Shown: positions 35,892 through 39,089 of the stretch, one piece after another | Position numbering within the stretch: the stretch's first letter is position 1 | Layout of the letters: the number at the start of each line of letters is the position of its first letter | DNA from: Perkinsus chesapeaki ATCC PRA-425 | Lineage: Eukaryota; Protista; Perkinsozoa | Direction: 5' to 3' | DNA: 52,519 bases | Assembly (NCBI GenBank): GCA_013115145.1 | Contig: JAAPAO010000208.1 | Location: 1-52,519, forward strand | Program-made: the position numbers and the translations under genes | The notes under the pieces: generated by a model | What the model saw: only the letters and a program-made list of their open reading frames with translations | Told to the model about the DNA's origin: nothing | Databases searched by the model: none

Positions 35892-38874
35892 TCATCCTCT
35901 ATTCATCTGTTGTTGTTGTTGTTGCTGCTGTTGAAGTCTCATTTGCTGAAGCTGATGTTGCTTCTGCGTAACCATCTGTATCATCTGTGTAACCCAGTCT
36001 GATGGAGCCACCATCATGTCCAAGAAGGGTGTGCTCGCTCTTGGATTGGGGGACTCAGTTGGTGAAGGGAAGAGTTCGCTCAAAGGATGGAAAGCAAAGC
36101 TCGGACTCTTGCCGATGCGCAGAGGCAAGTCGGGCTTCAAGTAACCCTCTGAAAAGGAGGACAATTTACCAAATACAGACAAGGAGCCTTCGTCCTTACG
36201 TTCGAACCATCGCCGCATAGCCTCTCTTGAAAAAGGTCCCTGAATATTCCCTGATAGATCTTTATAATACCAACCTTTCTCCGGGGCCGGTGCGAGTTTG
36301 GGTCGTGTCGACGGTGGGGGTGGTGGCGGAGGAGGAGGAGGAAGAGGGGTCGACGGTGGAGTAACAACCATTGGTGCTGGGGGCGGCACTGGTGGTGCAG
36401 CGGCGGCCACCGGCTGGTGCTGCTGTTGTGACGATGCTGGCGAGGATCGTCTCGTGTCACGATCTGACGAGGCCTCGCTGCTCTTCGCCTCCGGAGAGGA
36501 ATCACGGCGGCCTGCATCCCCCTTTCCGCTATGCGGTTTGTCTGAGATAAGCTATCCAAAAGAGTATGCAGAAAATGGCATACTTTTCTTCACGGGTCTA
36601 TCACCATAGGCAGCACGCTGCTCTGGTGGAAGATCTTCCAAATCAACTTCACCCCTCAAAAGTGCGCTGAACAGTCCTCGACGTCGCTCTTCCTCAGAGG
36701 TAGTCTAAACACCCGCACGATCGCCGCAAGCAGCATCAAACCAAATATTCTTACCCCATTCGCGCCGCCTTCATGAACGCCGCTGGTCTCGCTAGTCTCA
36801 CCAGAATCTGGCTGTGGTGACCTATTGCAGGAATTATCACTTGCTACCGTATAACAGAGATTCGCCCTACTTTCCCGGTGCGCGATATGCCTTAGCGGCA
36901 ACGGGGGCAGGAGGACCATCCAAAGCTGATGCAAGTGCTCGAGGTGAGCTGGGTACGTCCTAAAGGAACAGTTGTACAGCAGCAGCAGCAGTAAGGGTAG
37001 AGGGTTGTTACATGATAAGCATTGGAGGGCTTCCAAGATGCAGAATAGAGCTCGTTGAACTCATGGCGACAGATCAATCGCCCTAAGGAAGGCTAGCAGT
37101 GAGGCTAACTCTCAACTGATGATGACTGATTACCATTATAGGAGTATATATCGATTTTATTGTCAACACGCATACGTGGCCAAGTAGTTGCGGTAGAGAA
37201 GTGTCGACCATCTGGAGCCCAAACGCTTATGACAGGGCACTGCAGAAGGGTAGACATGTGAGGTGGTCCAGCAGCACCACCATTAGGTTACCTCCGCTCG
37301 AAGGCTTCCCACAACCTTATACTCAGCCATATCCCAGAAGTCCATCTCGCCAGCCATGTTACCAAACCCACCAACAACAGCATAACGACCAAACCGATTC
37401 CAACAAACCTATATGAGTGTTCGCTCTCACCCTTATCATTCGGCAGCAGCTCCACGTTACCGTATTCCTTTTAGCCTTGCCCATATTGTGGACAGTTTTG
37501 AGCGTGCGCAAGCCTGCTGGGGTCTCCTCAGGCTCGGACAGATCGCTCTCGCTCTGCTTCAGGCTCTTGGTGCTGAGTAAGGCAGTTCCCGGCGGAATAG
37601 GGCCAGATATGAGAATGAACTGCTCCTCTGGATCCTCTGGTTCTGAAGTGCAACCATCAATCTTCAATCCAGCCGCGTATCCTCCTACCGGTTTTGTCCC
37701 TCCTGGCATTGCCGGGGCACCAGTCCAGATCGTGCACAGGAGAATTACAGGCGACCCTCGAAACCACATTGGAAACCAAATCGAAAAGGTAAAGCATATT
37801 GGTGCCATAATAACTAGCAATCATTCGCTAACTCTAAACAGTTAAGTGATCCTTATTACGTGCTCTTGCCGGACTCATCCACATCAAGACTAAGAAGTCC
37901 CAACAGTTTGGTGCCAGATGCGTTCCAATATAAAGTCATGTCGTCGCCCTCTGGGAAGCTGTAGGACAAAACAAAGTTTTTAGGGTCGCTCAATTTAGAA
38001 ATGTGCACCTGAGCGAAAGGCAGTGTCCCATACGCTCAAGCTCCTCAACAGCAGCTTACAGCAGGGTTCCTCTCCGAGCCTCGTGAGACAACACAGGCTA
38101 CTTTCGGCTCACTCTCCACCTCTGAGAAGATGGAAAGCTTGATACGAAAGTTCACACGAGCATCAGCGGCGCACCTGGCCCTGAGGGGGAGAGCTCTATC
38201 TGCTGAATCCCCGGAATAGTCTGTTCGTTCGTTGATGCCTTCCTTGAATTCAGGACTTGTACCTTCCCATAACACTGCCCTGCCGAAGTGAGACGGGTAC
38301 GATTCCCTACAACATCCGCATCAGGCAGTATTCTGACACAGTAGGCTTCATCATCGGTCCACTTCATCGCCGGCCATAGGTGTTTGCTCATCCTCTTCAT
38401 TCGGCTCTCGACAGCCTTGCATCTCCCTGGAACGCTCCACAGGCCTAGATTTGGTAAATCGCGTTTGGCATCGTAACGTTCGAAGGTAACCTAAAGTAGA
38501 TCGTCGAGTCTGGCCTGCTGATATCCCTCGCCCGCATCACCATGTAGTTCGACAGAGGAGAGAAGTAAAAATTCTTGAAGCCCTTTGAGTTTGGCTGCGC
38601 CTCCATGACAATCTCCTTGTAGTCTTTGGTTACGTCATATACGGTGATACCGTTATTGTTATTCATACAAGCACAAAGCGTGCCTAAAAACACCGCTCAT
38701 GGGAATCGAACCCGGCTCGACAACAACCGCCGCTTTACCGTCTGCGTTCCAGTGAAATCCTTCAGCGTTGGTGACATGCGAGCCCTCCAATGTTATAAGC
38801 TTCTTCAACGACTTGCTGGCATAGTCGAACCGGTATATCTCAACACCGCTCTTGCAGACCGCGGCAATATCCAT
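35892..38874 (-). CDS. EIF2A: Translation initiation factor eIF2A fused to polyPro-GYF-polyQ C-terminus
   Basis: WPAMKWTDDE, YWNASGTKLL..DVDESGKSYYG, RNTVTWS, GGFGNMAGEMDFWD and WAPDGRHFSTATTWPRMRVDN (eIF2A), then in frame WYYKDLSGNIQGPFSREAMRRWFEQGYLKPDL (GYF). Confidence 0.88.
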
Positions 38875-39089
38875 TTGGTATATAAAAGAGAGAAAATTTA
38901 CAGGGACTGTTGAAATAGAAGACCAACGAAGACAGCAGCTTTAACACAACAACACTGGCGGCAACAAGGCAACGAGGCAAGGAGGCATCATCATTGAGGC
39001 ATGCTGCGAGACAATGCAATGGCCAGTTGAATAGTTCAAACGCATCCGAGACAGGATACACGACATGCTCCTCCACCACGGAATACCCT

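What the first reader, a model, noticed from the sequence alone, without database searches (positions are those of the whole stretch)
35892..38874. eIF2A fused to a GYF domain
Seen: after the eIF2A beta-propeller (...PRMRVDN...ELYSASWKP...KAYRAPG), four introns (36960-37011, 36822-36870, 36705-36754 and 36542-36583) keep the frame into a Ser-rich linker. This leads to WYYKDLSGNIQGPFSREAMRRWFEQGYL (from 36272) and a polyQ end. Established: canonical eIF2A ends in a basic coiled region without GYF. GYF proteins (GIGYF2, Smy2) bind PPG motifs and act in translational repression and ribosome quality control. Inference: a lineage-specific coupling of alternative initiation to mRNA repression or decay machinery.
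Basis: partly seen in the sequence, partly recalled or inferred. Interest (0 to 1): 0.75.

Follow-up and report, generated by a model that had tools for sequence, protein, structure and literature searches.

The report
eIF2A fused to a GYF domain
This Perkinsus gene really does encode one protein joining the poorly understood translation factor eIF2A to a GIGYF/Smy2-type GYF domain, and dinoflagellates and uncultured relatives share the fusion, so it is an old natural link between eIF2A and translational repression or quality-control adaptors that nobody seems to have studied.

Summary
On the minus strand, 38874 to 35892, 16 exons and 15 GT..AG introns of 42-55 nt give one 744-aa reading frame. 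It holds the eIF2A beta-propeller, a Ser/Pro-rich linker, a Smy2/GIGYF-type GYF domain and a polyQ end.

RNA contigs show a trans-spliced leader at the 5' end and confirm the first two introns. They do not cover the junction. The fusion therefore rests on other evidence:
- The exon-intron pattern is conserved across three Perkinsus species, with saturated synonymous change and low non-synonymous change in propeller, linker and GYF alike.
- Uncultured relatives carry propeller-to-GYF in a single ORF.
- A dinoflagellate mRNA with a spliced-leader remnant encodes both domains.

The fusion is not confined to Perkinsus. At least 48 eIF2A relatives carry GYF, and none of them keeps the canonical coiled-coil tail. 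Core dinoflagellates have both a canonical and a GYF form. A coccidian eIF2A has no GYF.

Function is inferred, not shown. I read it as a translation-machinery adaptor that brings PPG-motif partners to ribosomes for repression or quality control. The sequences are in databases under automatic names, but I found no paper on the architecture.

The parts
38907..38908 (-). Trans-splice acceptor AG. RNA contigs join the spliced leader ...CCGTAGCCATTTTGGCTCA(AG) here. The 5' UTR then runs 38906-38875.
   Evidence: Loose ends of contigs X1 and X2 at 38908; pyrimidine tract and AG read.
38739..38874 (-). Exon 1, with the ATG at 38874.
   Evidence: RNA contigs skip 38738..38684; model.
38541..38683 (-). 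Exon 2.
   Evidence: RNA contigs skip 38540..38491.
38311..38490 (-). Exon 3. Intron 3 is 38310..38263.
   Evidence: Alignment with the P. olseni and P. marinus proteins and DNA; an RNA? contig covers 38319-38476.
38175..38262 (-). Exon 4 (VQVLNSRKASTNEQ...).
   Evidence: This segment is conserved as coding in homologues.
38060..38121 (-). Exon 5.
37860..38008 (-). Exon 6, where the Pfam eIF2A match begins.
37689..37813 (-). Exon 7.
37461..37642 (-). Exon 8, an acidic and Ser-rich insert within the propeller.
37292..37408 (-). Exon 9 (GGFGNMAGEMDFWD blade).
   Evidence: Pfam eIF2A 1.8e-9.
37134..37239 (-). Exon 10 (PRMRVDN motif).
   Evidence: Pfam eIF2A 7e-12.
37012..37082 (-). Exon 11, the end of the propeller.
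36871..36959 (-). Exon 12, with the AYRAPG motif at 36890-36873. This is the family's AYRPPG motif. Similarity to solved eIF2A structures ends here.
36755..36821 (-). Exon 13, start of the linker.
   Evidence: 81% identical to P. olseni, one 3-nt indel, flanking GT..AG conserved.
36584..36704 (-). Exon 14 (GLFSALLRGE motif, shared with canonical eIF2A tails).
36200..36541 (-). Exon 15: Ser/Pro-rich linker, a run of ten prolines at 36341-36312, and the first half of GYF from 36272.
   Evidence: Pfam GYF 1.1e-10; indels against the other Perkinsus species all multiples of 3.
35892..36148 (-). Exon 16: second half of GYF (36146-36066), a conserved extension ...PFLDMMVAPSDW (36065-35994), the polyQ tail, and the stop at 35894-35892.

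Best explanation
One trans-spliced gene of a Perkinsus species encodes a 744-aa protein. From the N terminus it has the nine-bladed eIF2A beta-propeller, the family's AYR(P/A)PG and G-x-x-A-x-x-R-G-E motifs, and a roughly 130-residue disordered Ser/Pro-rich linker. It then has a Smy2/GIGYF-type GYF domain with a family-specific extension, and ends in polyQ. The GYF module takes the place of the coiled-coil tail of canonical eIF2A.

Shown:
- the architecture;
- its conservation under purifying selection;
- its presence in three Perkinsus species, in core dinoflagellates (as a paralogue beside canonical eIF2A) and in uncultured relatives.

Inferred: the propeller places the protein in the translation machinery at or near the 40S subunit. 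The GYF domain binds proline-rich PPG-hydrophobic motifs of partner proteins. The protein would thus be an adaptor bringing repression, decay or 40S quality-control factors to ribosomes or mRNPs. In animals and yeast that job is done by separate GYF proteins (GIGYF1/2, Smy2/Syh1).

My confidence is about 0.95 for the architecture and about 0.4 for the adaptor mechanism. The single figure given for this explanation blends the two.
For: Gene model: 15 GT..AG introns of 42-55 nt and one open frame.

RNA: spliced leader joined at 38908, and introns 1 and 2 confirmed.

Conservation: exons are far more alike than introns between three Perkinsus species. Splice sites are conserved, C-terminal exon indels are in threes, and pN is 0.05-0.12 against pS 0.6-0.87 in propeller, linker and GYF. 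The model is 88% identical end to end to P. olseni KAF4687185.

Fusion independent of the junction introns: P0003 (L005) and P0007 (L009) are single ORFs running from the propeller to GYF. The P0003 group has only a small 5' intron upstream of the called ORF.

Transcript-level fusion: dinoflagellate mRNA L003 begins with ...TTTGGCTCAAG, the 3' end of the dinoflagellate spliced leader, and encodes a 770-aa eIF2A+GYF protein.

Family assignment: the propeller matches human eIF2A 8DYS at 5e-34 and S. pombe 3WJ9 at 4e-29, against eIF3b at 7e-15. The GYF profile matches GIGYF1 at 6.5e-17, GIGYF2 at 2.3e-16 and Smy2 at 2.3e-13, against CD2BP2 at 1.8e-4. The AlphaFold model (pLDDT 82) best matches the GIGYF1/2-TNRC6 and Smy2-peptide structures.

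Tail replacement: GYF and the coiled-coil tail never occur together, 48 against 59 with 0 both.

Context from papers:
- Human eIF2A binds 40S near the mRNA entry channel and affects 40S quality control (bioRxiv 10.1101/2025.05.22.655611).
- eIF2A, Smy2 and Syh1 are all labelled at the yeast 40S head (PMC8583833).
- GIGYF2-4EHP represses initiation at collided ribosomes (PMC7381030).
Against: - No RNA covers 38318-35500 in this species, so the junction is not shown by cDNA here.
- The only cDNAs found are short and end in poly(A) at 38400-38405.
- In human eIF2A the propeller alone does not sequester 40S. A C-terminal helix (residues 529-556) is also needed (PMC10570035). By my reading, that helix is the coiled-coil element the GYF forms lack. 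Ribosome binding by the propeller of this protein is therefore an assumption.
- No ligand of the GYF domain is known in Perkinsus.
- The last aromatic residue of the GYF signature is Leu here (GYL).
- The 4EHP-binding motif of GIGYF is absent.
Confidence: 0.6

Rival explanations
1. Two neighbouring genes, an eIF2A that ends near 36.87 kb and a small GYF protein, are merged only by gene modelling.
For: If intron 12 is not spliced, a TAG stop follows KAYRAPGK at once. Perkinsus and dinoflagellate genes can be resolved by trans-splicing. No RNA covers the junction.
Against: Purifying selection runs unbroken through the linker in the fused frame, and there is no in-frame stop. The only Met between the AYRAPG motif and GYF lies in the PAPMVV stretch. 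All five junction introns are conserved in three species. Relatives have propeller-to-GYF single ORFs. A dinoflagellate mRNA with a spliced-leader remnant spans both domains. At least 48 homologues have both domains.
Confidence: 0.03
2. The protein is still an alternative initiator-tRNA or initiation factor. The GYF domain directs it to particular mRNPs to switch on their translation, for example under stress, rather than to repress them.
For: This is the classical view of eIF2A (PMC6208778, PMC7139343). The propeller and the conserved tail motifs AYR(P/A)PG and GLFSALLRGE are kept.
Against: Yeast and human studies find little role for eIF2A in initiation (PMC10945734; bioRxiv 10.1101/2025.05.22.655611). 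The C-terminal helices are replaced; in the human protein that region was mapped as mRNA-binding (Kim et al., as cited in PMC10570035). Known Smy2/GIGYF-type GYF proteins act in repression and surveillance (PMC7381030, PMC8583833).
Confidence: 0.2
3. The GYF form has left translation. It would be a beta-propeller scaffold used in another GYF-linked process such as splicing, vesicle traffic or RNA-granule assembly.
For: Dinoflagellates keep a canonical eIF2A beside it, so the paralogue is free to take a new role. The Smy2 GYF domain also binds the splicing factor BBP (PDB 3FMA). A translation-independent role for eIF2A has been reported (PMC12315956). The polyQ tail and low-complexity linker are what one might expect of a granule protein.
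Against: No canonical eIF2A of Perkinsus surfaced in three searches. The GYF form may therefore be the only eIF2A there, although this is not proof. The propeller is under strong constraint, pN 0.05-0.09.
Confidence: 0.15

Closest known systems
Canonical eIF2A (human EIF2A, PDB 8DYS; S. pombe, PDB 3WJ9; yeast YGR054W)
   Same: The N-terminal beta-propeller matches at 5e-34 and 4e-29, better than eIF3b. The PRMRVDN, GGFGN and AYR(P/A)PG motifs and the G-x-x-A-x-x-R-x-E motif just after the propeller are kept.
   Different: The lysine-rich coiled-coil tail (KK-I/V-R-x-L-x-KK-L...) is missing. A long disordered linker plus a GYF domain stand in its place. None of the 132 relatives has both.
GIGYF1/GIGYF2 (animals) and Smy2/Syh1 (yeast), the Smy2-type GYF adaptor proteins
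   Same: The GYF domain is of the same subtype. It has Asp after W-x-Y, the GPF...M..W...GY(F/L) signature, sequence matches at 6.5e-17 to 2.3e-13, and a predicted fold at 1.8 A rmsd from the GIGYF1/2-TNRC6 complexes.
   Different: No other GIGYF feature is present. The 4EHP-binding Y-x-Y-x4-L-hydrophobic motif is absent, and the GYF is C-terminal, following a propeller. The GYF carries a conserved family-specific frame: (P/A)-C/A-P-E before it and LFP...F..M..P..W after it.
eIF2A-GYF paralogue of core dinoflagellates (Breviolum minutum symbB.v1.2.008257, Biecheleria cincta, P0040 from MMETSP)
   Same: Same architecture and same GYF frame motifs. A single origin of all GYF forms is not rejected (AU p = 0.09).
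   Different: It is only about 26-28% identical in the propeller. Linkers are longer (about 200-350 aa). It coexists with a canonical eIF2A in the same group.

Membership tests
eIF2A (Pfam PF08662 family) | N-terminal nine-bladed beta-propeller of the eIF2A/eIF3b type, closer to eIF2A than to eIF3b. | tested here: met
   Pfam hits in four exon pieces. The orthologue P0013 matches 8DYS at 5e-34 and 3WJ9 at 4e-29, against eIF3b at 7e-15. The ESM Atlas nearest clusters are all eIF2A.
eIF2A (Pfam PF08662 family) | Conserved post-propeller motif AYRPPG followed by G-x-x-A-x-x-R-x-E. | tested here: met
   The window has AYRAPG (36890-36873) and GLFSALLRGE. Both align with canonical and GYF-type homologues.
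eIF2A (Pfam PF08662 family) | C-terminal lysine-rich region and coiled-coil helices. In the human protein this region is needed, together with the propeller, for 40S sequestration. | tested here: not met
   The coiled-coil motif is absent from the window protein and from all 48 GYF-type relatives. The role of the human element is from PMC10570035.
eIF2A (Pfam PF08662 family) | Binding to the 40S subunit and to Met-tRNAi. | not testable with these tools
   Needs biochemistry.
GYF domain, Smy2 subtype (Pfam PF02213) | Signature W-x-Y-x(6-11)-G-P-F-x4-M-x2-W-x3-G-Y-F, with Asp rather than Trp two residues after the Tyr. | tested here: met
   The window has WYYKD...GPFSREAMRRWFEQGYL. The last Phe is Leu, as in P0025 and P0037. 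The invariant columns are W, Y, D, G, P, M, W, G, Y. Pfam gives 41.4 bits against a 25.7 cut-off on the first half alone.
GYF domain, Smy2 subtype (Pfam PF02213) | GYF fold (beta-beta-alpha-beta-beta). | tested here: met
   AlphaFold model of the P. olseni orthologue with 29 homologues, pLDDT 82. The top Foldseek hits are 7RUQ, 7RUP and 3FMA, probability 1.00, TM by target 0.57-0.72.
GYF domain, Smy2 subtype (Pfam PF02213) | Binding of PPG-hydrophobic peptides. | not testable with these tools
   Needs peptide binding or AP-MS.
GIGYF / Smy2 protein family (full-length orthology) | N-terminal 4EHP-binding motif Y-x-Y-x4-L-hydrophobic and the GIGYF-type overall architecture. | tested here: not met
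   No such motif in the 744-aa model. The architecture is propeller, linker, then C-terminal GYF.

The most novel reading that the evidence does not exclude
The fusion works as a Rosetta stone. On this reading eIF2A and Smy2/GIGYF-type GYF adaptors act in one pathway in eukaryotes generally: surveillance of stalled or idle 40S subunits and repression of their mRNAs. In Perkinsus, dinoflagellates and their relatives the two have been welded into a single polypeptide, which in Perkinsus may be the only eIF2A. A further possibility is that the near-universal YRPPG motif of canonical eIF2A is itself a GYF-binding site. It contains PPG in 56 of 66 canonical forms but in only 12 of 58 GYF forms. Those counts are not phylogenetically independent, and PPG followed by Ala or Gly is not the preferred ligand.
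Probability: 0.2. Interest if true: 0.8.

Novelty: new variant of a known kind. Interest (0 to 1): 0.55.

Why it matters
The role of eIF2A has been argued over for fifty years. Recent work finds almost no role in initiation (PMC10945734) and points instead to 40S binding and ribosome quality control (PMC10570035; bioRxiv 10.1101/2025.05.22.655611).

A conserved natural fusion of the eIF2A propeller to the kind of GYF domain used by GIGYF2 and Smy2/Syh1 is independent, evolutionary evidence for that direction. Those adaptors act in translational repression and collision or mRNA surveillance (PMC7381030, PMC8583833).

The fusion makes the idea testable in two ways:
- ask what the GYF module binds in Perkinsus, which can be cultured and transfected;
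- ask whether eIF2A and GIGYF/Smy2 cooperate in yeast or human cells.

It also matters for dinoflagellate biology, where gene expression is thought to be controlled largely after transcription and translation factors have diversified.

The finding should not be oversold. It is a domain-architecture variant already present, unremarked, in public protein databases.

Tried and rejected
1. The full-length spliced protein has no reference, so I did not hand it to any search tool. I used exon pieces and the orthologues P0013 and P0020 instead.

2. RNA evidence for the junction. The only public runs holding this locus are tiny 454 spliced-leader RT-PCR libraries and contigs of 'organism A'. They cover 38319-38908 only. 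Nothing covers 36.9-36.2 kb.

3. My first model treated 38262..38221 (42 nt) as an intron. I rejected it because the segment is 76% identical between species, lacks GT in the others, and aligns as coding (LQVLNSK) in distant homologues. A donor at 38313 was likewise replaced by GTAGGG at 38310.

4. Merged-gene artefact: rejected (see the first rival explanation).

5. CD2BP2-type GYF: rejected, since its PDB matches are about twelve orders of magnitude weaker than those to GIGYF.

6. Two independent fusions. The tree splits the GYF forms into two clades, but the AU test does not reject a single clade (p = 0.091). The GYF frame motifs are also shared. The question stays open.

7. Self-binding of the GYF domain to the proline run just upstream. 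Proline-rich stretches recur upstream in many homologues but not all, and none is PPG-hydrophobic. This remains a speculation.

8. Taxonomic identity of the two uncultured GYF clades (P0003 and P0007 groups). No spliced leader was found on their contigs, which are genomic. Unresolved.

9. Whether Perkinsus also has a canonical eIF2A. None surfaced, but each search scored only 8000 word-sharing candidates, so absence is not shown.

10. ESM Atlas: only canonical eIF2A and eIF3b clusters came back, with no eIF2A+GYF cluster of 50 or more members.

11. Earlier findings of this scan: no note mentions eIF2A or GYF.
Full report
**What is there**

The minus strand between 38874 and 35892 carries an intron-rich eukaryotic gene. 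Pfam finds the eIF2A domain (PF08662) in four separate exon pieces. The best are 37108-37287 at 7e-12 and 37286-37408 at 1.8e-9. Pfam finds the GYF domain (PF02213) at 1.1e-10 in 35895-36551, covering profile positions 1-24 of 45. The second half of GYF follows a 51-nt intron (36199..36149).

Splicing 15 GT..AG introns of 42-55 nt gives one open frame of 744 aa with a single terminal stop.

**RNA evidence**

Public RNA contigs hold only the 5' fifth of the gene. They confirm introns 1 and 2 (38738..38684 and 38540..38491). They also join ...CCGTAGCCATTTTGGCTCA to the genome at 38908. This is the dinoflagellate/perkinsid spliced leader, added at the AG at 38908-38907. The mRNA therefore has a 32-nt 5' UTR.

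Earlier notes of this scan name the genome Perkinsus chesapeaki. I can only say that the closest proteins are from P. olseni (88% identity) and P. marinus (84% and 81%). The RNA does not cover the propeller-GYF junction, so the fusion had to be tested in other ways.

**Is it one gene?**

Four independent lines say yes.

1. *Comparison among Perkinsus species.* I aligned the window with the P. olseni (L010) and P. marinus (L011) loci.
   - Exons are 58-87% identical and introns mostly 31-62%.
   - GT..AG is kept at orthologous positions for nearly all introns, including the five between the propeller and the end of GYF.
   - All indels in the C-terminal exons E13, E15 and E16 are multiples of three.
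   - Synonymous sites are saturated (pS 0.60-0.87) while pN is 0.05-0.12. This holds equally in the propeller, the linker and GYF. Coding constraint thus runs unbroken through the junction, with no in-frame stop and only one internal Met.
2. *Annotated orthologues.* P. olseni KAF4687185 (719 aa) and two P. marinus proteins (723 and 705 aa) have the same architecture. A second P. olseni model, KAF4667583, reads into the last intron and truncates the GYF domain. That is an annotation slip.
3. *Uncultured relatives.* Two distant relatives encode propeller-to-GYF as a single uninterrupted ORF on very compact contigs: P0003 on L005 and P0007 on L009. The P0003 group has only a small 5' intron upstream of the called ORF.
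4. *A dinoflagellate mRNA.* L003 starts with the 3' end of the spliced leader (TTTGGCTCAAG) and encodes a 770-aa eIF2A+GYF protein.

The merged-gene artefact is therefore very unlikely.

**What the two halves are**

The propeller of the orthologue matches human eIF2A (8DYS, 5e-34) and S. pombe eIF2A (3WJ9, 4e-29) better than eIF3b (7e-15). Similarity to the solved structures ends at the AYRPP motif.

A profile of 29 GYF modules from this family matches GIGYF1 (6.5e-17), GIGYF2 (2.3e-16) and Smy2 (2.3e-13). CD2BP2 matches only at 1.8e-4. The Asp after W-x-Y marks the Smy2 subtype.

An AlphaFold model (pLDDT 82) finds the GIGYF1/2-TNRC6 complexes and the Smy2-peptide complex as best folds.

The module has a conserved frame not seen in GIGYF. 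This frame is a P-C/A-P-E stretch before the domain and LFP...F..M..P..W after it, and the model predicts that these add strands. The GIGYF 4EHP-binding motif is absent.

**Distribution**

Searches with orthologues and profiles plus name look-ups show eIF2A+GYF in:
- Perkinsus marinus and P. olseni, as well as this window;
- core dinoflagellates, with full-length GYF forms in Breviolum minutum, Biecheleria cincta and an unnamed MMETSP dinoflagellate;
- the same dinoflagellate clade in Pyrodinium bahamense, Scrippsiella and Polarella, where the assemblies break in polyQ or are partial;
- two uncultured clades.

Core dinoflagellates also have a canonical eIF2A with the lysine-rich coiled-coil tail. 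These include Symbiodinium, Durusdinium, Cladocopium, Effrenium, Alexandrium, Dinophysis, Crypthecodinium and Gymnodinium. In them the GYF form is a paralogue.

A coccidian (Hammondia), green algae, fungi and animals in the sample have no GYF.

Among 132 family members of at least 450 aa, 59 have the coiled-coil motif only, 48 have GYF only, and none has both. GYF replaces the tail rather than adding to it.

In a tree of the propeller, the GYF forms fall into two clades with canonical forms between them. An AU test does not reject a single GYF clade (p = 0.091), and the shared GYF frame motifs favour one origin. No canonical eIF2A of Perkinsus surfaced, but the searches were capped, so this stays open.

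**How it probably works**

The following is shown: a propeller of the eIF2A type and a Smy2/GIGYF-type proline-motif reader are held on one chain by a flexible linker, under purifying selection, across a deep clade.

The following comes from published work:
- Human eIF2A binds and sequesters 40S subunits (PMC10570035).
- It sits near the mRNA entry channel and modulates RPS2/RPS3 ubiquitination and 40S turnover (bioRxiv 10.1101/2025.05.22.655611).
- It has little role in initiation in yeast (PMC10945734).
- Yeast eIF2A and the GYF proteins Smy2 and Syh1 are all labelled at the 40S head (PMC8583833).
- GIGYF2-4EHP is recruited to collided ribosomes to shut off initiation (PMC7381030).

The following is inferred: the protein is an adaptor that brings PPG-motif partners to ribosomes or ribosome-bound mRNPs for repression, decay or 40S quality control. 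I put this at about 0.4.

The main caveat is this. In the human protein the propeller alone does not inhibit translation, and a C-terminal helix (529-556) is also needed. By my reading, that helix corresponds to the coiled-coil element the GYF forms lack. Ribosome binding may therefore depend on the GYF partner, or may work differently.

The rivals are:
- a targeted activator of initiation (0.2);
- a paralogue that has left translation (0.15);
- a modelling artefact (0.03).

**Novelty**

The sequences are public. Some carry automatic names such as 'Eukaryotic translation initiation factor 2A' or 'GYF domain-containing protein'.

Full-text searches found no paper that notes or studies the architecture:
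- eIF2A with GYF domain gave five papers, none about a fusion.
- GYF with Perkinsus gave none.
- GYF with dinoflagellate gave only work on CD2BP2.
- 'translation initiation factor 2A' with Perkinsus gave none.

I class it as a new variant of a known kind. Its interest is moderate to good, because it bears on the open question of what eIF2A does.

**Limits**

- The spliced full-length protein could not be handed to the search tools, as it has no reference.
- Junction cDNA for this species is lacking.
- The uncultured clades are not placed taxonomically.
- All functional statements are inference.

Noticed in passing
window 38400-38908 (minus strand): In three 454 spliced-leader RT-PCR runs of one sample, the only cDNA contigs are short. 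They run from the spliced leader through exons 1-2 and 86-91 nt of exon 3, then end in a poly(A) run after 38400/38405, inside the coding region. The genome there (AATGAAGAGGATGAGCAAACA) is only moderately A-rich. This could be internal oligo-dT priming or a real premature polyadenylation product.
   Followed up: partly
window 38319-38778: Contigs of 'organism A' (run X4) come in two forms over the same exons. One is identical to the window and the other about 91-92% identical (14 differences in 158 nt, 13 in 178 nt). This suggests a second allele or paralogue. P. marinus also has two copies (P0020 and P0021).
   Followed up: partly
window 36149-36199; L010 (P. olseni): The 51-nt intron inside the GYF domain is in frame and free of stops in the window, so retention would insert 17 residues into the domain. 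In P. olseni the same intron contains a stop, and the database model KAF4667583 reads into it, giving a truncated GYF. That looks like an annotation error rather than an isoform.
   Followed up: partly
window 36312-36341: A run of ten prolines lies about 13 residues upstream of the GYF module. It is a 30-nt insertion relative to P. olseni and P. marinus. Proline runs of 7-11 also lie just upstream of GYF in several uncultured homologues (P0022, P0023, P0035, P0036). They could act as a built-in pseudo-ligand, but none has the PPG-hydrophobic form.
   Followed up: partly
window 36873-36890 and homologues: The family's conserved motif after the propeller contains PPG (YRPPGA or YRPPGG) in 56 of 66 coiled-coil-type eIF2As but in only 12 of 58 GYF-type ones. 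Perkinsus has YRAPGK and the dinoflagellate paralogue has YRPPKA. The counts are not phylogenetically independent. It may hint that canonical eIF2A carries a GYF-binding site.
   Followed up: partly
L005 and L009 (uncultured eukaryote contigs): The contigs carrying the single-ORF eIF2A-GYF genes are extremely compact. Genes lie tens of bases apart or overlap, and almost no introns are called. They belong to unidentified marine eukaryotes whose eIF2A is closest to that of Perkinsus.
   Followed up: no
L010 and L011 versus the window: In P. olseni and P. marinus the gene is followed by proteasome-subunit and PITH-domain genes on the opposite strand. I did not check whether the window keeps this order.
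   Followed up: no
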